From Octopus sinensis (taxonomy: Eukaryota), in contig NW_021834017.1 of the NCBI RefSeq assembly GCF_006345805.1, positions 1 through 50,848 on the forward strand: a stretch of 50,848 nt of DNA, given 5' to 3'. The translations under genes were made by a program, and so were the position numbers. Positions 2,071 to 50,848 of this stretch are shown piece by piece; the stretch's first letter is position 1, and every line of letters begins with the position of its first letter. The notes beneath the pieces were generated by a model. The model saw nothing but the letters and a program-made list of their open reading frames with translations. It did no database searches and was not told where the DNA came from.

Positions 2071-2102
2071 ACCTGCTTCGTTTCTCTTCATCGAAGAATA
2101 AC

Positions 2103-5057: not shown

Positions 5058-5943
5058 GAAATACGTAGCCAAAAACTAACTCCAACCGCATTAAGAGGCT
5101 GCAGATTTTCACCACTGAACAATCGATTATAGTTAGCAAAGTACATCTTGTCTATTAGATTGGTGACCGGGTACTAAACTTAATGTAACCAAAGTTACGG
5201 CTACCAATAATGCTCCTAAGTGTTACTAGACTTTCTAAAGAGAAATCTACAAGTCTCTGTGAATCAGCAATCGCATCCAAGTGTTTGCACAGAATATTCT
5301 GCACTAGGGCGATGCAAGTGTCCCGAAATATCTGATTTAACGATAAGAAAACGCAGATGGTCTGGGGGCAAATACTTCGTGCAGCCGATCCCCTAACCGT
5401 GACGTGTATTTGCCATTTAAATATGGCTAACCCCTAAGGGTGGATGCTACTGTAGTTTGTAGCCACAGGAGGACACCTCCGGTTGGCTTTAGACACTCTC
5501 TGTGCCCTATCAGTATTTGCAAAGGCAAGCCACCTTCCAGTCTTCTACTTATGATACACACGGACTAGAGCTTACCCCTAACGCTTTCCCGAAAAGGCGT
5601 AACTTCGGAAGAAGTACCGGATACATTTCAACAAACTGTATTTATATATATAGGGGATTCAAGGTTGGTGGGAGTAAAGGGTTTATCTTCAGAAATGTAA
5701 CAAAGCCACTTACGGTAGTTATACCGAAAGATCGCCCCCGAAAAGTGTGGACCGAATCACACCACCAAAGTAATATTTCGTAACGGGTCGTACACCGGTG
5801 TGAAATAATTTTTTTCCCCAAAAGGGTGTGAACAAAGTTTTCCCACCAAGGGGCGCGTTAAATACCAGTAGTTGCAAAATAACAATAAACACAGAAGAAG
5901 CACATCGCGATTTCAGAGAGTTGACTTAAATCAAAAAGTGGGT

Positions 5944-5959
5944 GGCCCTGAAAAGGGCC
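5944..5959 (-). promoter_or_regulatory. Histone 3' stem-loop of H4
   Basis: Minus strand GGCCCTTTTCAGGGCC followed by ACCCA. Confidence 0.97.
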
Positions 5960-5992
5960 GGTATGTTCTTGAATAAGCTTAGGAATGTTCAC

Positions 5993-6992
<1,000 letters not shown>

Positions 6993-27364: not shown

Positions 27365-28550
27365 AGTTACACATATTCCACGATGCACACATTCCACGAA
27401 GCACATATTCCACGAAGCACATTCTGCGATGAACATATTCCCTGATGCACATATTCCACAATACATATATTCCATGTTGCACATATTCCATGAAGTGCAT
27501 TCCACGATGCACATATTCCACAAAGCACATTCCCCGATGCACATATTCCACGATGCACATATTCCACGAAGCACATTCTGCGATGCATATATTCCACAAA
27601 GCACATTCCCCGATGCACATATTCCACGATGCACATATTCCACGAAGCACATTCTGTGATGCATATATTCCACAAAGCACATTCCCCGATGCACATATTC
27701 CACGATGCACATATTCCACGAAGCACATTCTGCGATGCATATATTCTACGAAGCACATTCTGTGATGCATATATTCCACGAAGCACATTCTGTGATGCAT
27801 ATATTCCACAAAGCACATTCCCCCCCCGATGCACATATTCCATGAAGCACATTCTGTGATGCATATATTCCACAAAGCACATTCCCCGATGCACATATTC
27901 CATGAAGCACATTCTGTGATGCATATATTCCACAAAGCACATTCCCCCGATGCACATATTCCACGAAGCACATTCTGTGATGCATATTTCCACAAAGCAC
28001 ATTCCCCCGATGCACATATTCCACGAAGTACATTCTGTGATGCATATATTCCACAAAGCACATTCCCCGATGCACATATTCCACGATGCACATATTCCAC
28101 GAAGCACATTCTGCGATGCATATATTCCACGAAGCACATTCCCCGATGCACATATTCCACGAAGTACATTCTGTGATGCATATATTCCACAAAGCACATT
28201 CCCCGATGCACATATTCCACAATACATATATTCCCTGATGCACATATTCCGCAATACATATATTCCACGTTGCACATATTCCACGAAGCGCATTCCACGA
28301 TGCACATATTCCACAAAGCACATTCCCTGATGCACATATTCCACAATACATATATTCCACGTTGCACATATTCCACGAAGCACATTCTGCGATGCACACA
28401 TTCTGCAATGCACATCTTCCATGAAGCGCATCCTACGATGCACATATTCCGCGTTGCACACATTCCACGTTACACATATTCCACGAAGCACATTCCACAA
28501 AGCACATTCTGTGTTGCACACATTCCACGAAGCACATTCCACGTTGCACA
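27365..28550. repeat. Minisatellite of 14/16-bp monomers with 30- and 60-bp higher-order units
   Basis: For example GCACATATTCCATGAA-GCACATTCTGTGAT-GCATATATTCCACAAA-GCACATTCCCCGAT, recurring at 27831 and 27891. Confidence 0.95.
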
Positions 28551-28685: not shown

Positions 28686-28870
28686 GACACACGCATGCAC
28701 CTTTCTTCACAGCCTTGCGCATGCATCTGCACACTTGATTCATACACACACGCATGCACCTTTCTTCACAGCCTTGCGCATGCATCTGCACACTTGATTC
28801 ATACACACACGCATGCACCTTTCTTCACAGCCTTGCGCATGCATCTGCACTCTTGATTCATACACACACA
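28686..28870. repeat. 3 x 59-bp tandem repeat
   Basis: ACGCATGCAC at 28691, 28750 and 28809. Confidence 0.93.
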
Positions 28871-29065
28871 CATGCTATCTCTGCCACATTCATGCTCTAC
28901 ACATGCCTTTCTCTCTAACGGGAAATAAATATCTCCTTAAAACTTCATGCATTTTTCCTCTTTTACATCCTGCATTATGCAATTATAACAACAAATTTTT
29001 ATCGTCAGAACTACTGACGATCGACACATCATAATATTGCATGCCTGATCAATTTCTACCATTAA

Positions 29066-31200
29066 AAACAAATTGGTTTGAAAATTTGATTTTTGGTGGA
29101 ATTCTCGTTTAAGAACCCCATATGACCCCTCATAACCTTTTTTAGCTTTTTGGAATTTAAAAATAAATTCAGCACATTTTCAGTGAAATATTCAAAAATA
29201 TAGTTTTTTAATTTTATATTTCAGCTTATGTAGAGAAACTAAGTTCCTTTTCTTGCTTGTATTTCAATATTTTTATCCCCATAAAAACATTTATGCTATT
29301 AAAACAAATTGGTTTGAAAATTTGATTTTTTGTGGAATTCTTGTTTAAGTACCCCATATGACCCCTCATAACCTTTTTTAACTTTTTGGAATTTAAAAAT
29401 AAATTCAGCACATTTTCAGTGAAATATTCAAAAATATAGTTTTTTAATTTTATATTTCAGCTTATGTAGAGAAACTAAGTTCCTTTTCTTGCTTGTATTT
29501 CAATATTTTTATCCCCATAAAAACATTATGCTATTAAAACAAATTGGTTTGAAAATTTGATTTTTGGTGGAATTCTGGTTTAAGAACCCCATATGACCCC
29601 TCATAACCTTTTCTAACTTTTTGGAATTTAAAAAAAAATTCAGCACATTCCAGTGAAATATTCAAAAATATAGTTTTTTAATTTTATATTTCAGCTTATG
29701 TAGAGAAACTAAGTTCCTTTTCTTGTTTGTATTTTCCAGTTGGTTCTAACATGTATTCATCATCATCATCATCATCGTTTAGCGTCCGCTTTCCATGCTA
29801 GCATGGGTTGGACGGTTCAACTGGGCTCTGGGAAGCCAGAAGGCTGCACCAGGCCCAGTCTGATCTGGCAATGTTCTACGGCTGGATGCCCTTCCTAACA
29901 CCAACCACTCCATGAGTGTAGTGGGTGCTTTTTACATGTCACCGGCACAGGTGCCAGGGGAGGCTGGCAAACGGCCACGATCGGATGGTGCTTTTTATGT
30001 GCCGTCCCCATAAAAACATTTATGCTATTAAAAAAAATTGGTTTGAAAATTTGATTTTTTGTGGAATTCTTGTTTAAGAACCCCATATAACCCCTCATAA
30101 CATTTTCTAACTTTTTGGAATTTAAAAAAAAATTCAGTACATTTTCAGTGAAATATTCAAAAATATAGTTTTTTAATTTTGTATTTCAGCTTATGTACAG
30201 AACTAAGTTCCTTTTCTTGCTTGTATTTCAATATTTTTATCCCCATAAAAACATTTATGCTATTAAAACAATTGGTTTGAAAATTTGATTTTTGGTGGAA
30301 TTCTCGTTTAAGAACCCCATATGACCCCTCATAACCTTTTTTAACATTTTGGAATTTAAACATAAATTCAGTACATTTCCAGTGAAATATTCAAAAATAT
30401 AGTTTTTTAATTCTGTATTTCAGCTTATGTACAGAAACTAAGTTCCTTTTCTTGCTTGTATTTCAATATTTTTATCCCCATAAAAGCATTTATGCTATTA
30501 AAAGAAATTGGTTTGAAAATTTGATTTTTGGTGGAATTCTGGTTTAAGAACCCCATATGACCCCTCATAACCTTTTCTAACTTTTTGGAATTTAAAAAAA
30601 AATTCAGTACATTTCAAGTGAAATATTCAAAAATATAGTTTTTTAATTTTATATTTCAGCTTATGTAGAGAAACTAAGTTCCTTTTCTTGTTTGTATTTC
30701 CCAGTTGGTTCTAACATGTATTCATCATCATCATCATCGTTTAGCGTCCGCTTTCCATGCTAGCATGGGTTGGACGGTTCAACTGGGGTCTGGGAAGCCA
30801 GAAGGCTGCACCAGACCCAGTCTGATCTGGCAATGTTTCTATGGCTGGATGCCCTTCCTAATGCCAACCACTCTGTGAGTGTAGTGGGTGCTTTTTACGT
30901 GTCACCGGCACAGGTGCCAGACGAGGCTGGCAAACGATCACAATCAGATGATGCTTTTTATGTGCCATCCCCATAAAAACATTTATGCTATTAAAAAAAA
31001 TTGGTTTGAAAATTTGATTTTTTGTGGAATTCTCGTTTAAGAACCCCATATAACCCCTCATAACCTTTTCTAACTTTTTGGAATTTAAAAAAAAATTCAG
31101 TACATTTTCAGTAAAATATTCAAAAATATAGTTTTTTAATTTTATATTTCAGCTTATGTAGAGAAACTAATTTCCTTTTCTTGCTTGTATTTCCCAGTTG
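29066..31200. repeat. ~235-bp satellite, 7 monomers, in a ~965-bp higher-order repeat containing a retroposon fragment
   Basis: AATTGGTTTGAAAATTTG at ~29070, 29306, 29541, 30037, 30270, 30506 and 31000; retroposon pieces (-) at 29757-30006 and 30721-30968. Confidence 0.9.
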
Positions 31201-32449
31201 GTTCTAACATGTATGGTTTTTCAATCATCACCTTCACAATCCGAATGATATTTGTAGAAAATTCCACTAAAGAAATATCCATTTTTCCAAAAGTTATGAG
31301 GAAATAAAGCCAACTGATGTGAATTTTCCAAAACTTTTCACTCCACCCTCGGAAAACTTTTTCACATCAAATTCCGATATATCCATTAATATCCATTTGT
31401 CAGAAAGTTATGAGTAAAGGAAGGTGTGTGATTTAAGGGAGATCTGCCTGTTGTTTCTAACACATCCCACAACCACCTTTCTTGTTTCTTCCTCATTCTA
31501 ACATGTATTCATGTTTTTCAATATTTTTGTCCCCATAAAAACATTTATGCTATTAAAAAAACTGGTTTGAAAATTTGATTTTTGGTGGAATTCTCGTTTA
31601 AGTACCCCATATAACCCCTCATAACCTTTTTACTTTTTAAATTTTAAAAAAATTCAGTACATTTTCAGTAAAATTCTAAAAAATAATATCTTTTATTTTT
31701 TTCTTTCAGAAACTAAGTTCTTTTCGTTGTTTGTATTTCCCAGTTGGTTTTTGAAACTTCCCATTGCATCAAGCCACAACTATAAGGTTTGTCCAAATAG
31801 AAGAGATTCTGTTGTAAATATTGGATTGTATAGTCATAAAAACACAAGATATATATATGAGGGAGATTTAGCTGTTGTGTCTTGCACATCACACAGACTT
31901 TCACAGAATTACATGTAGACATAGATTAAAGAACAAACAAAATGTGAAAACTATTCCTTATTTTAAGCATTAAAAATGTAAATTCAGGACTCTATCAATA
32001 TCTGTAACTTACTGCAAACTCATTAGGAGATGTGAGAGAGAGAGAGACAACCCAAAGCAAAACGACCAAGGAGCCGCCGGTTGCCGAAACAGACACTCCG
32101 AGGATTTTCACCAGAGCCCCGTCTGCCGGGTTGTGGGCCTAATACCACTCGGTGTCAGACCAAACTGCCTTGGGTGGCCCTACCAGGAACCAAAGTTCCC
32201 GACAGCATAGCTCTGACACTACCCGTTGCCAGTGTCCCCACCACGGTGAGGAGGGGATGGACTTCGGGGACGCATGATTTTTGAATGCAACATGAGTTAT
32301 GGTGCTTGAGTGCATTGAACTAGAATGAGGGTTGTCATTCAAAAGTCCAAGAAAAAAACAAAGTTTGTAAATGCGAGGAAATACCATGGAGTTTCAGGGA
32401 ACCTGACATGATCTGTAACTGTTGGATTTTCAGAAAAACTATACAAGAA

Positions 32450-33156: not shown

Positions 33157-33202
33157 ATGGCTAAATGGATCTTGTTCTGCTATTTGTTTGTAACATTTGA
33201 CC
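33157..33202 (+). CDS. Coding exon 1: signal peptide
   Basis: ttttttcag-atc-ATG, MAKWILFCYLFVTFD+C|gtaagt. Confidence 0.75.
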
Positions 33203-36200
33203 GTAAGTTTTATTTATATTTTATTTAATTTCTTTCCATAACTTATTTTTGTTAAGGCAAACTTACTCAGGTGCACAGGGGTCTGGAATGGGGTCACTCA
33301 CATAAGGAGGATTTTCTTTGTTTTGGTAGGGATTTTCCCAATTTTGTTTTCATCACAGCTTTAGAAATGATGCATTTTATGGAAGAAAATTTGGTCCAGT
33401 GGTTAGGGCAGCGGACTCGCGGTTTCGATTCCCAGACCGGGCGTTGTGAGTGTTTATTGAGCGAAAACACCTAAAGCTCCACGAGGCTCCGGCAGGGGAT
33501 GGTGGTGATCCCTGCTGTACTCTTTCACCACAACTTTCTCTCACTCTTACTTCCTGTTTCTGTTGTACCTGTATTTCAAAGGGCCGGCCTTGTCACTCTC
33601 TGTGTCACGCTGAATATCCCCAAGAACTACGTTAAGGGTACACGTGTCTGTGGAGTGCTCAGCCACTTACACGTTTATTGAGCGAAAACACCTAAAAGCT
33701 CCACGAGGCTCCGGCAGGGGATGGTGGTGATCCCTGCTGTACTCTTTCACCACAACTTTCTCTCACTCTTACTTCCTGTTTCTGTTGTACCTGTATTTCA
33801 AAGGGCCGGCCTTGTCACTCTCTGTGTCACGCTGAATATCCCCGAGAACTACGTTAAGGGTACACGTGTCTGTGGAGTGCTCAGCCACTTACACGTTAAT
33901 TTCACGAGCAGGCTGTTCCGTTGATTCGGATCAACCGGAACCCTCATCGTCGTAACCGACGGAGTGCTTCCATCCATCCACCGTCTTATTTCTGGAGTGC
34001 AGTCACCATCTCGATTTCTTTTGGAGCCAAGGAAGATGAAATCATCAACCACTTCAATCTCTTCATTATCGATCTTGATGCTGGTGTTTGTTGTGGCTGC
34101 TGTTGACATGATCTTCGTTTTCTTAACCACAACCCGTCACTATTTAATAAATTCTCAGATGTCTTTACTTTAACAGCTTCGTTTCCCTCTGTGTCTGCTG
34201 TAGTGTTTCCTGGTTTATCGAAATACGTGGGAATTTCATTTATGTATCCAATATTTCCTGGGGAGAACCCAAACATTTTACACTCCTTCAGAACAAATTT
34301 TTTCAGTTTCTGAGCAATATGAGTTTTTTTTTTGGCAGTCGCAGTCACTTATCAATACATGTCAGCCTCAACATCCAAAGCCCTCATGTTCCACCATTTT
34401 GTCCTGCACCTTTCAGGGTCCACCTCTTCCACAGATTGCCTCCGCAGTTAGAGATCAGCACTTCTTTACATAGCAGTCCTTGTCCGTTCATTTTTAGAAT
34501 GACATTGTAAGACAGGTGTAAAAGGATGACCCATTACCAGTTTAAACATGAAACAGGTAGAATCTTTGTGCCAGGTATGGCTACTTTAACTCGTTAGCAA
34601 TTAGTTTATTCCGTTTAATGTAATGCTCCTTTAGACTTGGTTTTTGAATTAATCATTCGTTATCTTGTAGTTTTGACATTTTGATGATGTGATTGTTTAT
34701 TTTTAGACTGACATTGTAGGGTAGGTGTGAGGGGCTGGACCCAGCCACTTAGAACATAAAACAGATATGGCTGCTTTAATCCTTTAGCAATCAAATTACT
34801 GTGAAATGTAATGTTCATTTATTCACATTGTTTTGAATTATTTCATCTTAAAATCAAAAAATTTTGTTTTCATCTTTTACAGATTTGTCAAGGGCACAAA
34901 AGTATAATATCACCCAAAGTGGTAAATATATTCTTCTTTCCTACATTTGACCCTCCAACATGGAGTATAGGCCACTCATAATTGAATTCCATGTTGCATA
35001 ATTTTTCACCTCTGTACTTATACTCTGCCATGAATGTCCCCCTTTCTCTAGTTCCTTTTGTGTTGATCTACGCCACTAGTTCTTAGGCCTACCTCTCTTT
35101 CTATATCCAAGTTAAGCTAAGTTAAGGTAAGTTAAGTTAATTTTTGGGCTCAAAAAGCAAAAAAGCAAGGCCATGTAGGGGGACATGGAGTTATGTACAG
35201 GGTGGTGTTCATGCAAAGAGTTCAGGCCATTTGTGGTCAAGGGAGACTTTGAACCAAGCAGTCGTCAGCATCTTCACTATCTCGTCCGGCAGCTTATTCC
35301 ACGGATCCGCAACCCGGACGGAGAAGGCCCCTCTTCTTCGATTGAGATGAAATTGTCGCAGATAGAGTGCATTCCACTCTGCGCTTTGCTCTACAATGAT
35401 ACAAAGAGTGGCGGTTTGATCTCCACATGAACGGTTCTTCCTAAATCCAGCTTCTTCTTTACTGCTGTCCTCATCATCTCTAAAAGTATCCTGTTAAAAT
35501 CTTTTCCGGGAGCTGATAATAGCCTAATCCCTCTATAAGATGCTGAGTACTCATCAGCCAATTATAGAGGTTTTCCATTAATAAAAAAGTTATCAAATCA
35601 AGTGGCAACATTATAGAGAAGGTAGATATATAGACAAAGATGTGGATTTAAATTTTAAGAACATATGAGGTACTAAGATTTGGTTGTTCCACTACATCAT
35701 ACGTTCTTAAAATTAAAATCCACATCTTTGTCTATATATCTACCTTCTCTATAATGTTGCCACGTGATATGAACATTTTTGTATTAACAGAAAACCTCTA
35801 TAATTGGCTGATGAGTGTTCAGCATTTTAAAACTGTTGTAATACTTACAACATTTAATAAAATGATGTAGTACGAAACGATCGTACCAAATTACCGGAGT
35901 CATTCTTATTGCTTATTTTCATTATAATCACCCCACGGATTTCTATGGATAACACCATACAAAATTCTGGTGCATCTAAATTAAGTACCATATTCATTTG
36001 AATCTAAATTTTTGCTGAACTTATATATATATATATTTGCCAACATAATGTGGCAGTCTTGGTTAGGACGAATGATACTGTAAATTTAGTCTTAGGAAAC
36101 ATCATCTATCTGCATACCAATGGTCTCTGGGTTATTTCCCTTCATCAGCACAGAATAACTGCTCGGCTACAGATGACTCCACTAAACTCTTGTCCAAAAT

Positions 36201-39200
36201 ATATACTTTCCAAAGTGACACAAAGTCTCTGATCTAACAAATAGAAAATTATTTCTAAATCTCTGAACAAAAGACATTGAGTAACAGTACTCTAGGGTAG
36301 AGATTATTTGCCAACATAATGTGGCAGTCCTGGTTAGGACGATTGTTACTGTTCCTTAGCCCTAGGAAATATCGTCTCCAGCAGGCTATATGACACACTA
36401 GCTGCATCCTTATATTTTCAAACAAGGGAGTTTAGCATCCCATAGGACATAGATAGCGTGTCATATACCCAGCTGGAGGCAGTGTTTCCTAGGGCTAGAT
36501 AACAGTAACAATCATCCTAACTAGGACTGCCATATTATGCTGGCAAATAATCCTTACTCTCGAGTAATGTTACTGAATGTTTCTCATTCAGGGACTTAGA
36601 AATAATAATTTTCTATTTACATATATATATATATACATATATATAAACAATGGGCTTCTTTCAGTTTCCATCTATCAAATCCACTCACAAGGCTTTGAAA
36701 CACACAAGTTTGTATGTATATATATACACACACAAGTGTGTATGTATATATATACACACACATATACATACACACACATATACATACAATGGGCTTCTTT
36801 CAATTTCCATCTAGAAAATCCACTCACAAGGCTGATGCTGTAGTAGAAGACACTTTCCCGAGGTGCTCTGCAGTGGGACTGAACCCAGGACCATGTGATT
36901 TGGAAGCAAACTTCTTAACTGATTTCGTTATTTCAGGAATTGCTGTGCTCAATGGATGTCTCACCCTTACGATAACAATACCTGATATGAAACGACCGGT
37001 GGTTTGGAAGTGCCGCAATTATAAATATGAATGTGACAAGACATGCGCTGATGGCCCTGACTATAAAGTGACACAGGATGGAGATACCTCCACGCTTTGG
37101 ATCAAAAAAGTAACTGAGAAATGTTTGACTTGGAGATTTGATGATGACAACCTTAATGCTGCAGACATTGATTTGAAGATAAAGAGTAAGGAAATGATTT
37201 ATAATAATTTCTTTATTGACCACAGAGGGCTAACACAAAGGAAAACATTCGGGAGGGTCTAGTGTGGGTTTTAGCATGTAAAAAGTCATACAAAGAATAA
37301 AAGAAATTCAAAGTAACATCCCTGATAGTTTGGGGACTTTGAAGGGCCACACGTAAAGAAAGCCCACAAAATCCAAGGTCTCCCTGGCCACCAGGGTTGA
37401 TGCCCTCTCCCAGTCTTTCCTCTCCAATATACAGGTACACTCTGAGAGAAGGCCCATTCACTCAGGTAATGCTCACCCCTCTCACCCACCTTTCAACAAA
37501 CTGCTTGGAAGCCAGCACTTACCTCTCCACCCTGATTTTCCTCTTCAAGTAAAACCTGAAAAAGTTTATTAGGGTTTTGACAAAATGGCAGTTGCTGGTC
37601 TTCAGCCCTTTCAGACATGTCCACTGTATGATCCCCTTTGCCATGGGCCCCGAGCAGATAAAAACTGGTTGCCCTTCCTGGTTGAGGGAAAGTAGAGGGG
37701 CCATCTTCACAATGGACTTCCAAAATTTTCCAAAATCAAAATTTTTGTTTTCATCTTTTACAGGTTTCTCAAGTGCAAACATTTACAAGATCACCCAAAG
37801 TGGTAAATATATTCTTGTTTCCTACATTTGACCCTCCAACGTGGAGTATAGGCCACTCATAATTGAATTCCATGTTGCATAATATTTCGCCTCTGTACTT
37901 ATACTCTGCCATGAATGTCCTCCTTTCTCTAGTTCCTTTTGTGTTGATCTACGCCACGGAGTTCTTAGGCCTACCTTTCTTTTTACATCCAACCGGTTCC
38001 ACTTTAAACACTTTTTGCTACATTTAGTGTGTCTTTTCTAATTGTGCTACCAATCCACTTCCTCCTTTTCTTAAATATTTGCTCCCTAATCAAAACTTGA
38101 TTTGTTCATTGCCATAGCTCCATATTGCTTATGTGTTTGGGCCATCTAATTTTAAGTATACTACGCAAGCATCTGTTGATGAATGGTTTTATTTGCTTAT
38201 TTGATTTAACTGTTGTTTGCCATGTCTCAGCCCCATACAATAACACCGCTTTTACGTTCGTGTTAAAAATTTTAACTTAAGTTAAGATAATTTTTGGGCT
38301 CAAAAAGCAAAAAAGCAAGGCCATGTAGGGGGACTTGGAGTTATGTACAGGGTGGTGTTCATGCAAAGAGTTCAGGCCATTTGTGGACAAGGGAGACTTT
38401 GAACCGAGCGGTCGTCGGCATCTTCATTATCTCGTCCGGCAGCTTATTCCACGGAACCGCAACCCGGATGGAGAAGGGCCCTCTCCTTCGATTGAGATGA
38501 AATCGTCACAGATAGAGCTTTTCGGAGTGACCCCGCAGCCGACGCTCTGGAGCAGGAGTGAAGAACATCTCTTCCGAGAGGTTACTTTGTTGTTTATTGA
38601 AATTACACTTGCGCTCCATACTTTCTTTAACAGGTGAAAAACGGTCCTTGCCTTACTTATTCTCACCTTAATATCTTCGTCGGTGCCACCTGAAAACGTT
38701 ATCTTACTACCTGAATACATAAATTGGCTACATCCTCTTGTTCACCAGTTTCTAGTTTAATACATTCATTGTTTACTTCATTAACGTGCATAATTTTTGA
38801 TTTGAGGTTGACTTTCAATCCTAGTTTGGCAGCTATTGCTTCTAATTTTGACATTTTATTTTGCATTTGGCTATGTTTGTGAAAGCAGCCCCCTATCATC
38901 TGCAAAGTCGAGATCTTCTACAGCTTCCACATCCGTCCATTCAATGCTTGTTTGGCTTTCAATCGTAGTTTCCTTCATAATCCAATCTATAACTAATAGA
39001 AATAAAAAGGGTGTAAGGATACAGCCCTGTCGAACTCCTGTTTTTACTTCAAATTTATCTGTAGCTCCGTTTCCATGCAAGACTCGGCATGACATTCCTT
39101 GGTATGTTGGTCTTATATATATATATGTATATCATCATCATCATCATCATCATCGTTTAACGTCCGCTTTCCGCGCTAGCACGGGTTGGACGGTTTGACC

Positions 39201-40461
39201 GGGTCTGGGAAGCCAGGGGCCGCACCAGGCTCCAGTCTGATCTGGCAGAGTTTCTACGGCTGGATGCCCTTCCTAACGCCAACCACTCCGTGAGTGGATT
39301 GGGTGCTTTTTACGTGACACCTGCACAGGGGCCGGAGGGTCCGGCATCGGTCACGATCGGTTCGAGCATTTTAACGTGTCAGCGGCACGGGGGCAACGAG
39401 GTCCGGGGTACTTTGGGGATCGGGGTACTTTGGGGATCCAGGGTACTTTGGGGGTCCGGGGTACTTAGAATGGGTAGGGGGTATGTGGAATTGCTGCAGA
39501 AAGCAGCCCGGGTCTTTGTAGTCACAGCATTTATCGTCACTGAGTAACGTAATTAGGTAGAGGAAAGAAATACAGATATTCTAGAGTTGAGTTGGGGAGG
39601 GGGGGTCCAGTTGAGGCGGGTAATATAGGGGAGCAACCAGTGGGGAAGGTTGGGGTAAGGAGGAACGATGGCAGGAAGGGGTTGGTGAAGGTTCCTAAGA
39701 AATAAAAACGTAGGATATTGAAATAAAAACGTAGGATATTACGAGGCGGGAGGGTACTAAAGGGGGTGGTCGGAATGAGGCAGTGTCAGGAGGAAGCGTA
39801 AGATCGGTGGGCAGTTGATGAGCTATGCGCTAGCAGCTTCTCTTTTCACAGTGAAAGCATATGAGGAGAAGGGGTAGTGGGTGGAGGGGGAGGGAGTAGG
39901 GCGTACCCGGTGTAGATGAGTAAGGCGTATCCGGTGTAGATGGTGAGAACAGGGTATACTGGTATTGGTGGTGGGGGGTGAGAACAGTGTTCACCGGTAT
40001 TGGTGGTGGTGGTGGTGAGAACAGAGTTCACCGGTATTGGGGGTGGGGGGCGGGCGCATGGCGGAAAGATGGGAAGAGATGGGATTACGGCTTGAGGTAG
40101 CCTAAGGTTAAATTTTGTAGAGAGAGAGATAGGAAAGATAAATCAAGTTATGGCGAAGGCTTGAAAGTAGCCTAAAAGGTAAATTTTTTCGTAACAATGT
40201 ATGAATAAACGTAGTAACAACGAATAAAAATAGTAAGATAAATTTTTAAGAACTTGCTGCGGGCATCGATCGAGAGTTGAAATTGAAGAAGAAAGTAAGT
40301 TGAATTGGGAATTTAAATTGCAGATATATACACACACACATACACACATACACACATACATATAAATATATATATACACACACACATACATACAATAGGC
40401 TTCTTTTAGTTTCCATCTATCAAATCCACTCACAAGTCTTTGAAATACACAAGTGTGTATG

Positions 40462-40493
<32 letters not shown>

Positions 40494-42433
40494 TATACAT
40501 ACACATGCACACATACACACACACACACATACATAGAATGGGCTTCTTTCAATTTCCATCTTGAAAATCCACTCACAAGGCTGATGCTGTAGTAGAAGAC
40601 ACTTTCCTGAGGTGCTGTGTAGTGGGACTGAACCCAGGACCATGTGATTTGGAAGCAAACTTCTTAACTGATTTCTTTATTTCAGGAATTGCTGTGCTCA
40701 ATAGAAACCTCACCCTTTCGATAACAATACCGAACATGAAACGACCGGTGGTTGGAAGTGCCAGAATTATAAATATGAATGTGACAAGACATGCGCTGAT
40801 GGCCCTGACTATAAAGTGACACAGGATGGAGATACCTCCAAGCTTTGGATCAAAAAAGTAACTGAGAAATGTTCGACTTGGAAATTTGATGATGACAACC
40901 TTAATATTGGAAGAATTGATTTGGAGATAAAGAGTAAGGAAATGATTTATAATAATTTCTTTATTGACCACAGAGGGCTAACACAAAGGAAAACATTCGG
41001 GAGGGTCCAGCGTGGGTTTTAGCATGTAAAAAGTCATACAAAGAATAAAAGAAAGTCAAAGTAACATCCCTGATAGTTTGGGGACTTTGAAGGGCCACAC
41101 GTAAAGAAAGCCCACAAAATCCAATGTCTCCCTGACCACCAGGGTGGATGCCCTCTCCCGGTCTTTCCTCTCCAATATACAGGTACACTCTGAGAGAAGG
41201 CCCATTCACTCAGGTAATGCTCACCTCTCTCACCCACCTTTCAACAAACTGCTTGGAAGCCAGCACTTACCTCTCCACCCTGATTTTCCTCTTCAAGTGA
41301 AACCTGAAAAAGTTTATTAGGGTTTGACAAAATGGCAGTTGCTGGTCTTCAGCCCTTTCAGACATGTCCACTATATGATCCCTTTTGCCATGGGCCCCGA
41401 GCAGATAAAAACTGGTTGCCCTTCCTGGTTGAAGGAAAGTAGAGGGGCCATCTTCACAATGGACTCAGCTGATAGTTGTATATAATAAGGGTTTCTTTTA
41501 TTTGCCACAAGGGCAAAGGATGAGGGGGTCAATACCAAGGTGTGTGTGTGTGGAGGTTATATTATCTTTCTCTTTTTACTTGTTTCAGTCATTTGACTGT
41601 GGCCATGCTGGAGCACCGCCTTTAGTCGAGCAAATCAACCCCAGGATTTATTCTTTGTACTTATTCTATGAGTTCTCTTTTGCCGAACCACTAAGTAACG
41701 GGGATGTAGACAAACCAGCAACGGTTGTCAAGCGATGTTGGAGGACAAACAGACACACAAACACACACATATATACGACGGGCTTCTTTCAGTTTCCATC
41801 TACCAAATTGGTTCTCTTGCTGAACCGCTAAGTAACGGGGACGTAGACACCCCAGCATCGGTTGTCAAGCAATGCTAGGGGGACAAACAGACACACAAAC
41901 ACACACATATATACGACGGGCTTCTTTCAGTTTCCATCTACCAAATTGGTTCTCCTGCTGAACCGCTAAGTAACGGGAATGTAGACACCCCAGCATCGGT
42001 TGTCAAGCAATGCTAGGGGGACAAACAGACACACAAACACACACATATATACGACGGGCTTCTTTCAGTTTCCGTCTACCAAATCCACTCACAAGGCTTT
42101 ATATAACCAAGCTCATGTGTGCAACATAGTGTTACTGGAAATTTTGATGGGGACTTTTCCTTTAGATCACTTTGAAATGGAATTTGTATAACAGAAATGA
42201 AAGTATTTTTTAATAGTTTAGTATGAAAATGGTCAAACTTGGGAGATATTACTATTTTTTATTAAAAAAAAAGGTATATATTTTATTGTTTGTCAATTGC
42301 AGATCCGAAACCTAAACCTCATGGACTAACTACACTTGAGATTGTCGGAATCATTTTTGGCTCACTGATCCTTGCTGCAATCCTTGTTGGACTCGCTTAT
42401 TTCGGCTACAAATATTTTAAAAATAACCATTAG
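33157..42433 (+). CDS. Six-exon type I membrane protein: signal peptide, two divergent Ig-like domains, TM, short tail. ~250 aa if the exon 5 frameshift is repaired; 154 aa if exons 4-5 are skipped
   Basis: All five introns are GT-AG and phase 1. Exons 33157-33202, 34883-34921, 36937-37185, 37764-37802, 40686-40933, 42303-42433. AATAAA at 42601 and 42774. The Ig call is inferred from the motif pattern. Confidence 0.8.
33392..33975 (+). mobile_element. tRNA-derived SINE family C with internal ~222-bp tandem duplication (intron 1)
   Basis: GGTCCAGTGGTTAGGGCAGCGGACTCGCGGTTTCGATTCCC head; GTTTATTGAGCGAAAACACC at ~33452 and ~33673. Confidence 0.88.
33985..34140 (-). pseudogene. RTE-clade LINE ORF2 fragment
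   Basis: KKTKIMST...IKIDNEEIEVVDDFIFLGSK..DGDCTPEIRR is the RTE/BovB-like post-RT region. Confidence 0.8.
34145..34320 (-). pseudogene. pogo/Tigger-like DDE transposase fragment
   Basis: IGYINEIPTYFDKPGNTTADTEGNEAVKVKTS resembles the pogo motif IGNMDETPVYFDMP..TT...G...V.V.T. Confidence 0.65.
34883..34921 (+). CDS. Coding exon 2: 39-nt micro-exon with signal cleavage region
   Basis: ttttacag|(H)LSRAQKYNITQS(G)|gtaaat; phase 1-1; N-I-T sequon. Confidence 0.8.
35109..35375 (-). mobile_element. CR1-like LINE 3' end with (TTAAC)n tail; duplicated at 38276-38570
   Basis: HLNRRRGAFSVRVADPWNKLPDEIVKM...FKVSLDHKWPELFA* matches the CR1 ORF2 C-terminus. Confidence 0.8.
35380..35539 (-). pseudogene. 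RTE-clade RT fragment
   Basis: SYRGIRLLSAPGKDFNRILLEMM resembles NYRGITLLSVPGKVFNRIIL. Confidence 0.75.
35540..35825. mobile_element. Intronic hairpin MITE, ~130-bp arms
   Basis: ATGCTGAGTACTCATCAGCCAATTATAGAGG / CCTCTATAATTGGCTGATGAGTGTTCAGCAT, with a long near-perfect inner stem. Confidence 0.85.
36301..36552. mobile_element. Intronic hairpin MITE; partial left-arm copy at ~36033-36110
   Basis: GATTATTTGCCAACATAATGTGGCAGTCC / GGACTGCCATATTATGCTGGCAAATAATC. Confidence 0.82.
36937..37185 (+). CDS. Coding exon 3: Ig-like domain 1
   Basis: ttatttcag|GIAVLNGCLTLTITIPDMKRPVVWKCRNYKYECDKTCADGPDYKVTQDGDTSTLWIKKVTEKCLTWRFDDDNLNAADIDLKIK|gtaagg; 249 nt, phase 1-1. Confidence 0.85.
37400..37718 (-). 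pseudogene. Probable L1/Tx1-like LINE ORF2 C-terminal fragment; duplicated at ~41150-41465
   Basis: ...MAKGIIQWTCLKGLKT...LINFFRFYLKRKIRVER...FVERW recalls LINE C-termini; recognised from memory only. Confidence 0.45.
37764..37802 (+). CDS. Coding exon 4: 39-nt linker micro-exon, paralogue of exon 2
   Basis: ttttacag|(S)FSSANIYKITQS(G)|gtaaat. Confidence 0.8.
38571..39105 (-). pseudogene. RTE-clade reverse transcriptase fragment
   Basis: FEVKTGVRQGCILTPFLFLLVIDWIM...DLDFADD...LGLKVN..KSKIM...YSGS...DIKVRISKAR; contains stops and frameshifts. Confidence 0.9.
39123..39390 (-). mobile_element. (GAT)n-tailed retroposon
   Basis: (CAT)n-CGTTTAACGTCCGC...GGATGCCCTTCCTAACGCCAACC. Confidence 0.85.
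39400..40110 (+). repeat. G-rich segment with short tandem repeats
   Basis: GGGGTACTTTGGGGAT-like x4 (~39405-39465); AAATAAAAACGTAGGATATT x2; ACCGGTATTGGTGGTGG-like x3; many G3-G7 runs. Confidence 0.75.
40686..40933 (+). CDS. Coding exon 5: Ig-like domain 2, with a 1-nt deletion at ~40752 in this assembly
   Basis: 248 nt against 249 nt for exon 3; GGTTGG against GGTTTGG; splice sites intact. Confidence 0.75.
41570..42098 (-). mobile_element. SINE family B with three tandem ~138-bp internal copies
   Basis: GAACC(A/G)CTAAGTAACG at ~41685, 41822 and 41960. Confidence 0.85.
42303..42433 (+). CDS. Coding exon 6: Pro-rich stalk, TM helix, short cytoplasmic tail, stop
   Basis: caattgcag|(N)PKPKPHGLTTLE-IVGIIFGSLILAAILVGLAYFGY-KYFKNNH*; positive-inside Lys residues follow the TM. 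Confidence 0.85.
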
Positions 42434-43484
42434 TATAAGAATGCTACAATTTGTGTTCTTTTCATCATCATCATCATCATCATCGTCTGCTTTCCATGCT
42501 AGCATGGGTTGGACGGTTCAACTGATGTCTGGAAAGAAGAAATAATTCTGTTTATCAGAATAAGACTTTCACTGACTGCATTGGCATAGTTGGTTTTTAA
42601 AATAAATTATATCCATATTTTAGCAATATTTCTTCCAAAACTCTGCTCCGTCTTTACTGGGAGTTTAAAAATCTTAAAAGCTATTAACTGTATATTTATC
42701 AATTTAGGACAACAACTAATTTCATTTATATAATTAACAGACAAAACTACATCAATACACTAAACTTGAAATCAATAAATTGAAACCGAAGGAGCTGAAG
42801 GGAAAAACACAAACAGAAAAGGTCCACTTTTTAAAATATTCTTTCCAGAAAAAGTGAGCGGTAGCAGATTCAGCATGGAAAATTACATGAATATTCCAAA
42901 TTTGAAAATTTTGACTGAATCTTAGAATGCAAAAGAATGTGATGTGTATGCGTATGTGTGGTGTCCCACCAACATGTGCTATTCCAATATAATTGCAATC
43001 TACACTTTCTTAAAGGTATTTCTCAAAATTTTCATTTAAAAATACCCATTTTTCCAGAAGTTATGAAGAAACAAAGTCGGTGGGGTACATTTGCATATGT
43101 ATACCCATTGCTTTAGCATAAATATCTTCAATTATAATCAAAGGGTCACTGCTTCCGTAGCCAACGAGAACAAAATCCTTAAGCATAGGAAATGAAGTGT
43201 GACCCATTTCTTCCACCTGTGACATTTGCCACAGTGAAGTTCTTACCATTGTTGGCGCCTCGCCTTACAGAATGGGTTCGGTGATCCCTATAAGGGTACT
43301 TGCTGCACCTCCTGTTTGTGTTTCTTTTGGTTTAGGATTTGTATTTTAATGTGGTATTGTATTATACGTGTATCATGTAAAGACATGTTATATAAGATAA
43401 AAACAACAGAAAAATAAGCCAACAAAATCAAAATATTTACTTATTAAAAAAAATAAAAACTCTTTACAGAATTTGCAAGAAAAA

Positions 43485-47164: not shown

Positions 47165-47818
47165 AGCAGTGGTAAAATGGTTGGGGTCTCATATAAAAGG
47201 GTCTGGAAGAAATATTACCATGGATAATTGGTTTACAAGTTATGGATTTAGAGTTAATCTCTTGGAGAAATATAGATTAACATTTGTTGACCCTTTCAGA
47301 AAGAACAAGATAGAACTTCCCCCTCAGTTTGTTGCCACAAGAGGCAGAACTGAATATACAAGCTTGTTTGGTTTCCAGAAGGATGTTACACTGACCCCAT
47401 ATGTTCCCACGAAAAGTAAAAATGTCGTCCTATGGAGTACAATGCATCATGATGCTGCAATTGATGTAAGTACGAAAGAAAAAAGAAAACCAGAGATTAG
47501 AACCTTCTACAACATTACTAAAGGAAGGGTAGGCCCCGTGGTGGATCAATTGTGTTCCATGTACGATGTTTCCAGAAATACTCGATGTTGGCCACTTACA
47601 GTTTTCTTCACCATACTCAATGTTGCAGGAATAAATGTATACAATATGTTCATGGCAAACCCTCAAACAGCTATCAGGGTCTGAAAGTTTCTGAGGGAAT
47701 CGGGACTGAAGTTGGTGGAGGACCAAATTCATCATTGCAAGACAAAACCCATCCATATTTGAGGAAAGACATGGAAAATAAGATTCGACATTTCTCAGCA
47801 TCTAAAGAATTACCTCCA

Positions 47819-49899: not shown

Positions 49900-50305
49900 T
49901 AGAGACTCATTTATAAGCATTATGATGAAGGTCTTATTTTAAATAAGGGACCAGTTTGGTTCTCCACCTACTGGCCCACTACTAGTGTCTTCAGTGTAGG
50001 TATTGTGACAGTTTTAAAAATCCTGTCTCTATCATGATACTGGAAACATGAAAGTCACTAAAAGCTTCTTCGCTGCTCCAATCGTTTGCTATTCTGGGTA
50101 ACTTGCTTATTCTCATTAATATATTTATAGCAGAAAATGCTTGGATTTCATCTAAGCATGTGGGTGGCCAGAAATGGTCCTTTCTACCACATTGCTTATA
50201 TTCTGTGTAGCAATGGTTCTGCACAGTAATTGCTTCCAACAAACTAGGAGGGAAAAATAAAAGAAGGTCAAATGGTTTTGTCTCCTGGAAATCACTGTGA
50301 CTAGG
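49900..50305 (-). pseudogene. piggyBac-type (PGBD4-like) transposase fragment
   Basis: LLFFPPSLLEAIT...WPPTCLDEIQAF..INILM.ISKLPRI..WSS...FLKLSQYLH...PLFKIRP. Confidence 0.82.
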
Positions 50306-50314
50306 TCCAATCTC

Positions 50315-50848
50315 TTTTCTCTTTTTACTTGTTTCAGTCATTTGACTGCGGCCATGCTGGAGCACTGCCTTTAATCGAGCAACTCGACCCCGGGACTTAT
50401 TCTTTGTAAGCCCAGTACTTATTCTATTGGTCCCCTTTTACCGAACCGCTAAGTCACGGGGACATAAACACACCAGCATCGGTTGTCAAGCAATGCTAGG
50501 GGGACAAACACAAACACACAATACATATATATATATATACATATATACAACAGGCTTCTTTCAGTTTCCGTCTACCAAATGCACACACAAGGCTTTGGTC
50601 GTCCCGAGGCTATAGTATAAGACACTTGCCCAAGGTGCCATGCAGTGGGACTGAACCCGGAACCATGTGGTTGGTAACCAAGCTACTTACCACACAGCCG
50701 CTCCTACACCTATATATATATATACATACGATGTTCTTCTTTCAGTTTCCGTCTACCAAATCCACTCACAAGGCTTTGGTCGTCCCGAGGCTATAGTAGA
50801 AGACACTTGCCCAAGGTGCCATGCAGTGGGACTGAACCCGGAACCATG
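50315..50848 (-). mobile_element. SINE family B with second head, running off the window
   Basis: Tail from 50315; heads at ~50545-50710 and ~50730-50848. Confidence 0.88.

What the first reader, a model, noticed from the sequence alone, without database searches (positions are those of the whole stretch)
33157..42433. Hidden six-exon gene for a small, probably lineage-specific Ig-like cell-surface receptor
Seen: consistent phase-1 GT-AG exons give signal peptide, [13-aa micro-exon + 83-aa domain] x2, a PKPKP stalk, a ~23-aa TM and a 7-aa tail, with polyA signals downstream. Established: Ig domains show B-strand LxC, C-strand W and E-strand LxIxxV, and are often encoded by phase-1 exons. Inference: LTLTIT, VVW and STLWIKKVT fit that fold, but the canonical B-F cysteines are absent and a different set (WKC, ECxxxC, EKC) is kept, so this is a non-canonical Ig-like fold. 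The tail has no signalling motif, which suggests an adhesion, recognition or co-receptor role. This is the best candidate for an undescribed system in the window.
Basis: partly seen in the sequence, partly recalled or inferred. Interest (0 to 1): 0.85.

Follow-up and report, generated by a model that had tools for sequence, protein, structure and literature searches.

The report
Octopus-specific divergent Ig-like surface protein gene
This is a real, already annotated but uncharacterised Octopus sinensis gene for a small membrane protein with one or two very divergent immunoglobulin-like domains; it belongs to a fast-evolving, tandemly duplicated octopod-only family, and this copy has a one-base frameshift in its second domain exon.

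Summary
The window is Octopus sinensis scaffold VCDQ01005272.1. All six exons exist at the stated boundaries, with AG/GT sites and phase-1 junctions. Exon 5 is 248 nt, not 249 (TT at 40752-40753 versus TTT in exon 3). The six-exon frame therefore stops at 40817-40819, before the stalk/TM exon. The gene is not hidden: RefSeq LOC115230624 (168 aa) is exons 1-5 ending at that stop. The positional orthologue in O. vulgaris has the same six exons and an intact 250-aa ORF. The "x2" is a tandem genomic duplication of about 3 kb, introns included. A 78-nt probable 5'UTR exon lies at 31709-31786. The Ig-like reading holds at fold level. AlphaFold2 with 37 family domains gives pLDDT 94, and Foldseek returns only IgSF domains (TM up to 0.7). 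Pfam finds nothing above threshold. B- and F-strand cysteines are absent; C39-C76 and C46-C50 disulfides are inferred. The family is octopod-only, with TM or GPI-like anchors and one to five domains. Between sister species the ectodomain exons differ tenfold more than introns. The pattern is a gene-conversion mosaic with dN/dS about 1 or higher. Function is untested; a non-signalling surface recognition or adhesion protein is the best guess.

The parts
31709..31786 (+). Probable 5'UTR exon (78 nt, no ATG), flanked by tttcag| and |gtttgt. Inferred to splice to the acceptor cag|ATC ATG at 33153/33154.
   Evidence: tblastn of the upstream stretch of O. vulgaris models P0009, P0012 and P0004 (ETKFFSLFVFPSWFLKLPIASSHNYK) matches at 100%. 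Splice sites were read. The UTR role is inferred.
33157..33202 (+). Exon 1: ATG plus the signal-peptide h-region (MAKWILFCYLFVTFD), ending in phase 1.
   Evidence: It differs at 1 of 46 nt from O. vulgaris.
34883..34921 (+). Exon 2: 39-nt micro-exon (HLSRAQKYNITQS). It carries the likely signal-peptide cleavage site (SRA|Q), an NIT sequon and beta-strand A.
   Evidence: It is identical (0/39) to O. vulgaris.
36937..37185 (+). Exon 3: 249-nt domain exon (83 aa), intact. It encodes Ig-like strands B to G.
   Evidence: It differs at 26 of 249 nt from the O. vulgaris orthologue.
37764..37802 (+). Exon 4: second micro-exon (FSSANIYKITQS), a duplicate of exon 2.
   Evidence: It differs at 9 of 39 nt from O. 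vulgaris.
40686..40933 (+). Exon 5: second domain exon, 248 nt. One T is missing at 40752-40753, giving a frameshift and a premature TGA at 40817-40819.
   Evidence: With the gap masked, it is amino-acid-identical to domain 2 of the chromosomal paralogue LOC115225116 (P0001).
42303..42433 (+). Exon 6: NPKPKP stalk, TM segment (LEIVGIIFGSLILAAILVGLAYFGY), tail KYFKNNH and TAG stop.
   Evidence: It differs at 1 of 131 nt from O. vulgaris.
42601..42779 (+). Two AATAAA poly(A) signals, at 42601 and 42774.
34850..37731 (+). Tandem duplication unit 1: micro-exon, intron, domain exon, intron.
   Evidence: Self-blastn, 92-94% identical to unit 2.
37732..41465 (+). Tandem duplication unit 2. It includes a 1.19-kb G-rich insertion at 39133-40323 that is absent from O. 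vulgaris.

Best explanation
The locus is a genuine member of an uncharacterised, octopod-restricted gene family. Family members are small type-I membrane or GPI-type surface glycoproteins.

Each ectodomain unit is about 96 aa. A 13-aa micro-exon encodes strand A, and in the first unit also the signal-peptide cleavage site. An 83-aa exon encodes the rest. The unit folds as a very divergent immunoglobulin-like beta-sandwich of I-/V-set type. It keeps the strand-C tryptophan but lacks the canonical B-F disulfide. Two other disulfides are inferred: a long-range C39-C76 link (end of strand C to just before strand F) and a local C46-x3-C50 link after strand C'.

The intended product of this gene, as shown by the intact O. 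vulgaris orthologue, is 250 aa: signal peptide, two Ig-like units, a PKPKP stalk, one TM helix and a 7-residue tail.

The units are phase-1 symmetric cassettes. They have been multiplied by tandem duplication and exchanged by gene conversion. They are the fastest-evolving part of the locus, while the signal-peptide and TM exons are nearly frozen.

Inferred mechanism (untested): the protein displays variable Ig-like domains at the cell surface. With no signalling tail, it would act as a ligand, adhesion or recognition molecule, or as a co-receptor subunit.

In this scaffold the second domain exon carries a 1-nt deletion. That is either a real disabling lesion of this copy or an assembly error.

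Confidence by part: real gene family with an Ig-like fold, about 0.85. Surface recognition function, about 0.4.
For: - Gene model: exon boundaries and phases, and RefSeq model P0002 on this very scaffold.
- Orthology: O. vulgaris has the same six exons as an intact 250-aa ORF, within DNA collinear at 96-98.6%.
- Transcription: a family member is a contiguous ORF on an octopus RNA-seq contig (PMC11662614).
- Fold: AF2 pLDDT 94.4 and pTM 0.85 with 37 domain sequences. Foldseek top hits are all IgSF, including titin M1, obscurin Ig32 (TM 0.66/0.70, rmsd 3.3 A), vNAR, VL/VH, sDscam Ig1 and CD8.
- Weak sequence signals all point to Ig: CD2, titin, myotilin and obscurin in the PDB profile search; I-set and Ig_3 are the only recurrent Pfam families.
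- Cysteines: C39 and C76 are both present in 20 domains, both absent in 13 and discordant in 4 of 37. C46 and C50 are both present in 36 of 37.
- Membrane anchor: best hydropathy window 2.75 in exon 6.
- Divergence: ectodomain exons 58/574 (10.1%), non-exon DNA 134/13711 (0.98%), SP plus TM exons 2/177.
- dN/dS is 0.8 or higher in all 15 pairs and above 1 in 14.
- The segment-by-segment mosaic indicates gene conversion.
Against: - There is no junction-spanning RNA evidence for this particular gene. No transcript-derived copy appeared in the protein searches.
- No Pfam Ig model reaches its threshold.
- The fold rests on a prediction, and the first shallow-alignment model was poor (pLDDT 52).
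- dN greater than dS is individually significant only for comparisons involving W1, without multiple-test correction.
- The excess divergence continues about 235 nt into the downstream intron. Gene conversion alone could therefore explain much of it.
- dN/dS near 1 together with a frameshift also fits a decaying copy.
- Signal peptide, GPI signals, glycosylation and disulfides are inferred from sequence only.
- No tissue or function data exist, and no paper mentions the family.
Confidence: 0.6

Rival explanations
1. The exon-5 frameshift is an assembly error in an unplaced, repeat-rich scaffold. The real gene would then encode the intact 250-aa two-domain TM protein.
For: - With the gap masked, exon 5 is amino-acid-identical to domain 2 of chromosomal LOC115225116, and exon 6 is identical to its tail.
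- The O. vulgaris orthologue is intact.
- The lesion is a TTT to TT change in a homopolymer.
- The scaffold is one unit of a tandem repeat of about 67 kb, where polishing is difficult (this last point is inference).
Against: - Single-base indels between the scaffold and O. vulgaris are symmetric, 22 versus 21, so there is no deletion-biased error signature.
- RefSeq did not flag or correct the frameshift; its model simply ends at the stop.
Confidence: 0.4
2. This scaffold copy is a recently disabled pseudogene or null allele of a functional family. The frameshift is real and the copy is drifting.
For: - A premature stop lies before the stalk/TM exon.
- dN/dS is about 1 to 2.8 with no overall purifying signal.
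- About 1.7 single-base indels would be expected in 574 nt of ectodomain exon at the local neutral indel rate, and 1 is observed (the expected figure is my arithmetic).
- The family has many redundant copies.
Against: - All splice sites are intact, and exon 5 has no other stop or indel.
- The SP and TM exons are nearly identical to O. vulgaris.
- dN/dS of about 1 or higher is also seen between intact copies such as A1, A2 and B1. It is therefore a family property and does not by itself indicate decay.
Confidence: 0.35
3. The functional product skips the broken unit. Splicing e1-e2-e3-e6 would give an intact 154-aa single-domain TM protein.
For: - The 4-exon splice is in frame (465 nt).
- Exons 4 and 5 are phase-1 symmetric cassettes.
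- Single-unit genes with this layout exist, for example O. vulgaris gene B at L003 82354-89217.
- RefSeq lists many isoforms for the neighbouring paralogues, and one of them skips a domain exon (P0001).
Against: There is no transcript evidence for this isoform. RefSeq's only model includes e4 and e5.
Confidence: 0.15
4. The RefSeq product is correct as written: a secreted 168-aa protein with one Ig-like domain and a frameshifted C-terminus, acting as a soluble form.
For: P0002 is the annotated product.
Against: - The C-terminal 26 residues are out-of-frame sequence with no conservation in any relative.
- A premature stop upstream of the last exon junction would normally trigger nonsense-mediated decay (established knowledge, not tested here).
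Confidence: 0.08
5. The domain is not immunoglobulin-superfamily by descent. It would be another Greek-key beta-sandwich (FN3, PKD or HYR-like), or a lineage-specific invention that converged on the fold.
For: - No Pfam Ig hit is above threshold.
- The canonical disulfide is absent.
- Weak profile hits also include bacterial He_PIG, PKD and HYR_4C repeat proteins.
Against: - The top Foldseek hits are overwhelmingly I-set and V-set Ig domains.
- I-set and Ig_3 are the only recurrent Pfam families, and P0010 misses the I-set cut-off by 0.1 bit.
- The strand-C Trp is conserved and the exons are phase-1.
- A possible abalone relative passes I-set.
Confidence: 0.12

Closest known systems
Immunoglobulin superfamily I-set / V-set domains (e.g. 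titin, obscurin, sDscam Ig1, CD8, antibody V domains)
   Same: - The predicted Greek-key beta-sandwich has strands A, B, C, C', D, E, F and G.
- The strand-C Trp is conserved.
- The E-strand has the pattern STLWIxxV.
- Each domain is encoded by phase-1 symmetric exons.
- Foldseek gives TM 0.55-0.71 and probability 1.0.
   Different: - Sequence identity is only 9-17%, and no Pfam Ig model is above threshold.
- There is no B-F disulfide. Conserved C39-C76 and C46-x3-C50 pairs take its place.
- Strand A is on a separate 39-nt micro-exon.
- The BC loop IPNMKRP is the most conserved element, whereas in recognition-type V domains that loop is variable.
Small IgSF surface glycoproteins with TM or GPI anchors and multigene, fast-evolving families (CEACAM, CD2/CD58/SLAM, Thy-1). 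This comparison is from my own knowledge.
   Same: - One to a few Ig-like domains sit on a short stalk.
- The cytoplasmic tail is very short or replaced by a GPI-signal-like C-terminus (P0005, P0006).
- The genes form tandem clusters.
- There is evidence of gene conversion and dN/dS of about 1 or higher.
   Different: - There is no detectable homology. CD2 domain 2 scores only E = 0.045.
- The family is octopod-restricted.
- No ITIM, ITAM or other motif is present.
- Ligands and expression are unknown.
Invertebrate diversified IgSF recognition molecules (Dscam/sDscam, molluscan FREPs). This comparison is from my own knowledge.
   Same: Ig-like exon cassettes that can be duplicated or skipped. 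RefSeq lists at least 8-12 isoforms for neighbouring paralogues. The ectodomains diversify rapidly.
   Different: - There are no FN3 or fibrinogen domains and no long cytoplasmic domain.
- Mutually exclusive splicing or somatic diversification has not been shown.
- The scale is much smaller: tens of genes with 1-5 domains.
Haliotis rufescens LOC124119024 (P0035)
   Same: - The architecture is a signal peptide, five tandem domains of about 97 aa, a stalk, a TM segment and almost no tail.
- It shares the motifs C-x3-C, STLxIxxV and TWxIxDxN.
- It passes Pfam I-set.
   Different: - Only about half of the domain aligns (profile positions 41-89).
- The E-value is inflated by five near-identical repeats.
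- It has the Ig-typical DAGTW motif that the octopod family lacks.
- Homology is not established.

Membership tests
Immunoglobulin superfamily (Pfam I-set PF07679, V-set, Ig_3) | Sequence match to a curated Ig profile above the gathering threshold | tested here: not met
   The window protein has no Ig hit; its best match is Sgo0707_N2 at E = 0.12. Of 37 family domains, 6 hit I-set (best E = 0.008) and 4 hit Ig_3, all below cut-off. P0010 scores 23.6 bits against a cut-off of 23.7.
Immunoglobulin superfamily | Two-sheet Greek-key beta-sandwich fold | tested here: met
   The AF2 model has pLDDT 94.4 and pTM 0.85 and is all-beta with eight strands. Foldseek against the PDB returns IgSF domains only at the top, with TM up to 0.71. 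This rests on a predicted structure, not a solved one.
Immunoglobulin superfamily | Canonical intersheet disulfide between strands B and F | tested here: not met
   There is no Cys in the predicted B strand (22-27) or F strand (78-82). The conserved Cys are at positions 39, 46, 50 and 76.
Immunoglobulin superfamily | Invariant Trp in strand C packing on the core | tested here: met
   W37 in VVWKC (strand C, residues 35-39) is conserved in at least 90% of 37 domains.
Immunoglobulin superfamily | Domain bounded by phase-1 introns | tested here: met
   All junctions are phase 1, and the 39 + 249 nt units are symmetric.
Type-I single-pass membrane protein | Cleavable N-terminal signal peptide | tested here: inconclusive
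   The N-terminus has the h-region WILFCYLFVTF followed by SRA|Q, and paralogues have SxA at the same place. No signal-peptide predictor was available.
Type-I single-pass membrane protein | One C-terminal hydrophobic helix of about 20 or more residues followed by basic residues | tested here: met
   IVGIIFGSLILAAILVGLA has mean Kyte-Doolittle hydropathy 2.75 and is followed by KYFK. In the window's own reading frame this exon is reached only if exon 5 is corrected or skipped.
GPI-anchored branch of the family (paralogues, not this gene) | C-terminal small-residue omega region plus a terminal hydrophobic stretch with no tail | not tested
   This was seen by eye in P0005 and P0006 (…NGAQGTSSLRTKSILVIGMIIAVII). 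No predictor was run. No such exon was found in the window.
CD2/SLAM or CEACAM families | Detectable sequence homology | tested here: not met
   The best PDB sequence hit is CD2 domain 2 at E = 0.045 and 16.5 bits, which is sub-threshold.
Dscam-like alternatively spliced Ig cassette systems | Alternative use of duplicated Ig exons in transcripts | not testable with these tools
   The only evidence is indirect. RefSeq isoform X8 of LOC115225116 joins two micro-exons and skips a domain exon, and LOC115225115 has isoforms numbered up to X12. No RNA reads were accessible.

The most novel reading that the evidence does not exclude
The family could be an octopod-specific, diversifying surface-recognition system. 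In that reading, tens of tandem genes built from interchangeable Ig-like exon cassettes are shuffled by gene conversion and alternative splicing. Their surface residues would be under positive selection around a conserved BC-loop site. They would serve immune (haemocyte), self/non-self or gamete/neuronal recognition, as a cephalopod counterpart to CEACAM, Dscam or FREP-type diversification. The family would also travel with the tandemly repeated histone-gene unit.
Probability: 0.2. Interest if true: 0.75.

Novelty: new variant of a known kind. Interest (0 to 1): 0.45.

Why it matters
Cephalopods lack antibody-type adaptive immunity, and very few of their lineage-specific surface proteins have been described. 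This work defines a previously unnamed Ig-like domain family, with no Pfam model and no paper found. The family has an unusual disulfide pattern and both TM and GPI-like anchors. It shows cassette-exon architecture and very fast, conversion-driven ectodomain evolution between sister species. That makes it a concrete, testable candidate for recognition functions in octopods.

There are also practical annotation points. The RefSeq model is truncated by a 1-nt frameshift. Two O. vulgaris models wrongly fuse these genes, one with histone H2B and one with satellite DNA. The gene family sits inside a tandem unit of about 67 kb that also carries the histone cluster.

Tried and rejected
I worked around this with substrings of P0002 and its relatives.
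- The first AF2 run, with 9 sequences, gave pLDDT 52 and only non-significant Foldseek hits. The 37-sequence run superseded it.
- The look-up of encoding contigs failed for P0001, P0006 and P0007 because those isoforms are not indexed, and for P0003 because the gene is too long. I therefore could not compare the scaffold at DNA level with chromosomal LOC115225116 to test the haplotig idea.
- The word-indexed homologue search is not exhaustive. It missed P0010, and searching again with the alignment added only two paralogues.
- The exon-versus-intron divergence excess (p = 4e-39) cannot be taken as proof of positive selection. The elevated tract extends into the intron and shows a conversion mosaic.
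- The indel spectrum could not discriminate assembly error from a real lesion.
- Bacterial He_PIG, PKD and HYR_4C hits are weak per-domain matches of 3-13 bits, inflated by repeats. I treat them as generic Ig-like-fold similarity, not homology.
- Literature searches by LOC, XP and UniProt identifiers and by topic found nothing on the family.
- No GPI-like alternative terminal exon was found in the window.
Full report
**Source and existing annotation**

The window is eukaryotic. It is Octopus sinensis scaffold VCDQ01005272.1 of assembly GCA_006345805.1, and its length matches exactly (50,848 bp). A protein search with the spliced product returned RefSeq protein LOC115230624 on this scaffold (P0002, 168 aa). 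That gene spans record positions 33157-40819. The gene is therefore not hidden; it is annotated as an uncharacterised protein.

**Checking the observation**

I rebuilt the exons from the sequence.

| Exon | Coordinates | Length (nt) |
|---|---|---|
| e1 | 33157-33202 | 46 |
| e2 | 34883-34921 | 39 |
| e3 | 36937-37185 | 249 |
| e4 | 37764-37802 | 39 |
| e5 | 40686-40933 | 248 |
| e6 | 42303-42433 | 131 |

- Every internal exon has a pyrimidine-rich AG acceptor and a GT donor, and the junctions are phase 1.
- e5 is one base shorter than its twin e3. It has TT at 40752-40753 where e3 has TTT at 37003-37005.
- As a result the six-exon CDS is 752 nt, shifts frame inside the VVW codons, and stops at TGA 40817-40819 (codon 169).
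- RefSeq's 168-aa product is exactly this truncated reading. It has no stalk and no TM segment.
- Splicing e1+e2+e3+e6 gives an intact 154-aa ORF.
- The stalk (NPKPKP), the TM segment (best 19-residue hydropathy window 2.75), the 7-aa tail and the two AATAAA signals (42601, 42774) are as described.

**The repeated unit is a recent genomic duplication**

- Self-comparison shows 34850-37718 duplicated in tandem at 37732-41465, at 92-94% identity with the introns included.
- Unit 2 carries a 1.19-kb G-rich insertion at 39133-40323 that is absent from O. vulgaris.

**Orthology confirms the gene model**

- A 99-kb O. vulgaris locus (L003, OX597842.1) is collinear with window 18.8-50.8 kb at 96-98.6% identity.
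- It has the same six exons at L003 15390-23421, with AG/GT sites, and they encode an intact 250-aa protein.
- A second, single-unit gene lies about 67 kb downstream at L003 82354-89217, and the histone cluster sits between the two genes.
- In the window the histone cluster (H2A, H2B, H4, H3; 1-7 kb) lies upstream of the gene. Rfam finds histone 3' stem-loops next to it.
- The gene and the histone cluster therefore belong to one tandemly repeated unit of about 67 kb. That plausibly explains why this scaffold is unplaced (inference).
- O. vulgaris models also reveal a conserved 78-nt exon upstream. In the window it lies at 31709-31786, has AG and GT sites and no ATG, and matches at 100% at the amino-acid level. 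It most likely splices to cag|ATC ATG at 33153/33154.

**The family**

- An exhaustive profile search of 1.84 billion representative proteins found 38 hits at E of 0.001 or less.
- Every one I could name and confirm as a true relative is octopod: O. sinensis, O. bimaculoides, O. vulgaris and Argonauta hians.
- O. sinensis has at least 13 loci, mostly on chromosome scaffold CM016885.1.
- All named members are labelled 'uncharacterized' or 'hypothetical'. The one exception is P0026, labelled 'zinc finger protein 239-like', which looks like a fused model.
- Members have one to five copies of the domain.
- They end either in a TM segment with a short tail or in a GPI-signal-like C-terminus, as in P0005 and P0006. 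Some carry a second, different Cys-rich domain.
- One member is a contiguous 138-aa ORF on a 1,067-nt contig from run SRR3401912. That run is an octopus meta-transcriptome (PMC11662614). The signal peptide, micro-exon, domain and tail splicing pattern is therefore real for the family.
- I found no transcript evidence for this particular gene.
- The chromosomal paralogue LOC115225116 (P0001) has a second domain and tail that are amino-acid-identical to the window's e4, e5 (gap masked) and e6. An intact, near-identical copy therefore exists in the same genome.

**Fold**

- Pfam gives nothing above threshold for the window protein.
- AF2 with 9 sequences was poor (pLDDT 52). Foldseek on that model gave only non-significant Ig hits.
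- With 37 non-redundant family domains, AF2 became confident: pLDDT 94.4 and pTM 0.85. The model is all-beta, with strands at residues 10-12, 22-27, 35-39, 42-46, 56-61, 64-69, 78-82 and 88-92.
- Foldseek against the PDB then returned about 2,000 matches. The top ones are uniformly immunoglobulin-superfamily domains:
  - titin M1 (E = 5.8e-4);
  - obscurin Ig32 (TM 0.66/0.70, rmsd 3.3 A);
  - shark vNAR, VL/VH, sDscam Ig1 and CD8.
  - All have probability 1.0 at 9-17% identity.
- Weak sequence signals agree with this:
  - the family profile's best PDB sequence hits are CD2 domain 2 (E = 0.045), titin, myotilin and obscurin;
  - I-set (6 of 37) and Ig_3 (4 of 37) are the only Ig-type Pfam families recurring among the domains;
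  - the five-domain paralogue P0010 scores 23.6 bits against the I-set cut-off of 23.7.
- The B and F strands have no cysteine, and the strand-C Trp is at least 90% conserved.
- Cysteine co-occurrence points to two disulfides:
  - C39 and C76 are both present in 20 of 37 domains, both absent in 13 and discordant in 4;
  - C46 and C50 are both present in 36 of 37;
  - four or five members lacking C39/C76 have an alternative C82/C87 pair.
- From this I infer a C39-C76 disulfide, joining the end of strand C to just before strand F. Those strands are neighbours in one sheet. I also infer a local C46-x3-C50 disulfide. I could not measure distances in the model.
- The most conserved elements are the BC loop (IPNMKRP) and strand C' (YKYEC). 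The most variable are the micro-exon/strand A, the C-C' turn, the D-E turn and the start of strand G.

**Evolution**

Mismatch rates between the window and its O. vulgaris orthologue:

| Region | Mismatches | Rate |
|---|---|---|
| Non-exon DNA | 134/13,711 | 0.98% |
| SP and TM exons (e1, e6) | 2/177 | 1.1% |
| e3 | 26/249 | 10.4% |
| e4 | 9/39 | 23% |
| e5 | 23/247 | 9.3% |
| Ectodomain exons pooled (e2-e5) | 58/574 | 10.1% (binomial p = 4e-39) |

- The elevated tract starts sharply at the exon's 5' edge but runs about 235 nt into the downstream intron.
- In that intron segment, the two copies within a species are more alike than orthologues. A1 equals A2 (0/128 differences), W1 and W2 differ by 3.8%, and W versus A differs by 10-12%. 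Clear orthology returns on both sides.
- This is a gene-conversion or concerted-evolution mosaic centred on the domain exon.
- Nei-Gojobori dN/dS is 0.8 or higher in all 15 pairs and above 1 in 14. W1 versus A1 gives dN 0.111 and dS 0.040.
- Individual significance is reached only for comparisons involving W1 (W1-A2, Fisher p = 0.008), without correction for multiple tests.
- I conclude that the ectodomain evolves fast through exchange among units. The cysteine/tryptophan core is conserved and the surface is free or diversifying. Positive selection is suggested but not demonstrated.

**Status of this copy**

- Single-base indels between the scaffold and O. vulgaris are symmetric (22 versus 21 over about 14.5 kb), and about 60% lie in homopolymers in both directions.
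- The e5 lesion could therefore be a real mutation or a residual assembly error. The tools cannot decide.
- All other features of the gene are intact.

**Mechanism (inference)**

The intended product is a type-I glycoprotein with sequons at N24 and N132. It would display one or two Ig-like domains on a short Pro/Lys stalk. Its 7-residue tail has no signalling motif. The features below fit a non-signalling recognition, adhesion or co-receptor role, comparable in principle to CEACAM or CD2-type families, or to invertebrate diversified IgSF molecules:

- both TM and GPI-like anchors within the family;
- tandem expansion;
- cassette exons;
- many RefSeq isoforms of the neighbouring paralogues;
- rapid, conversion-driven ectodomain change.

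There is no evidence on ligand, tissue or phenotype.

**Comparison and novelty**

- By fold this is an IgSF-like domain. By sequence criteria it fails the membership tests: it is below the Pfam threshold and lacks the B-F disulfide.
- It is best described as a new, very divergent variant of the Ig-like domain, founding an octopod-restricted family.
- A Haliotis rufescens protein (P0035) has five domains, a stalk and a TM segment, and passes Pfam I-set. It shares the C-x3-C, STLxI and TWxxxD motifs and may be a distant relative. However, its E-value is inflated by repeats and only half the domain aligns.
- No paper mentions any family member.

**Verdict**

- The Ig-like interpretation is supported at fold level.
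- The function is open.
- Interest is moderate: an undescribed, fast-evolving, lineage-specific IgSF-like family, found here as one possibly defective copy.

Noticed in passing
window 1046-6992: A replication-type histone cluster: H2A (1046-1423, -), H2B (about 1693-2070, +), H4 (5993-6304, -) and H3 (6582-6992, +). Rfam finds histone 3' stem-loops at 2098-2143 (+) and 5919-5964 (-). No H1 ORF was seen.
   Followed up: partly
L003 15390-23421, 54435-59217 and 82354-89217; window as a whole: In O. vulgaris the Ig-like gene and the histone cluster alternate with a period of about 67 kb (gene A, satellite, histones, gene B). The window is one such unit. The Ig-like family therefore appears to be co-amplified with the histone repeat.
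   Followed up: partly
P0004 and P0009 (O. vulgaris); L003 10001-89184: O. vulgaris gene models are chimeric. P0009 fuses histone H2B to the 5'UTR exon, SP exon and a TM exon. P0004 spans 79 kb, starts in the HIFH satellite and joins parts of two genes. The intact six-exon gene A is not annotated as such.
   Followed up: partly
window 13148-14027 and 14584-15462: A 147-bp satellite is present as two six-copy arrays in inverted orientation. The same satellite forms an array of about 9 kb in O. vulgaris (L003 38188-47371).
   Followed up: no
window 27370-28507: A 30/76-bp tandem repeat yields long spurious ORFs on both strands, up to 394 aa and rich in H, I, F and C. It should not be mistaken for a gene, yet it is read as coding at the N-terminus of O. 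vulgaris P0004.
   Followed up: partly
window 28794-31860: Tandem repeats (236-bp TRF period, about 965-bp higher-order unit) contain partial copies of the first half of the 5'UTR exon at 29705, 30670 and 31163. They lie upstream of the full copy at 31709-31786.
   Followed up: no
window 37186-37290 and 40934-41038 (first ~105 nt of the intron after each domain exon): This intron segment is more conserved among all five paralogous units (0-4% divergence) than the adjacent exon (5-13%). It may be a splicing-regulatory element for cassette use, or a conversion hotspot.
   Followed up: partly
window 39133-40323: A 1.19-kb G-rich, internally repetitive insertion in intron 4 that is absent from the orthologous O. 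vulgaris intron. It follows a (CAT)n microsatellite and a repeat that is also seen at 42466-42530.
   Followed up: no
window 47169-47684 (+) and 49991-50365 (-): A piggyBac-type transposase fragment. The called 154-aa gene at window 47220-47684 hits PF13843 (DDE_Tnp_1_7). A further ORF nearby, at 49991-50365, was not identified.
   Followed up: no
window 33390-33976 (intron 1): A 222-bp direct duplication (33452-33901, 98% identical) of a repeat whose 5' part looks tRNA-derived by eye (ggtccagtggttagggcagcggactcgcggtttcgattccc). Rfam gave no tRNA hit at the gathering threshold. It is probably a SINE.
   Followed up: partly
P0018, P0021, P0023, P0033, P0034 (O. bimaculoides, O. sinensis, Argonauta hians): A sub-branch of the family carries a second, different Cys-rich domain of about 90 aa after the Ig-like domain (…KPKIE…C.Y.V.A.CSLP.T.I.C…), with no Pfam match. 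It may be another divergent Ig-like (C2-type) domain.
   Followed up: no
window 36997-37000 region; residue 21 of the domain (NGC in exon 3): Domain 1 of the window has an extra, unpaired-looking Cys (NGC) where most paralogues have the sequon NGN[LV]T. The same NGC variant occurs in domains 2 and 3 of LOC115225115 (P0010), so it is a shared allele or variant and not a private lesion.
   Followed up: partly
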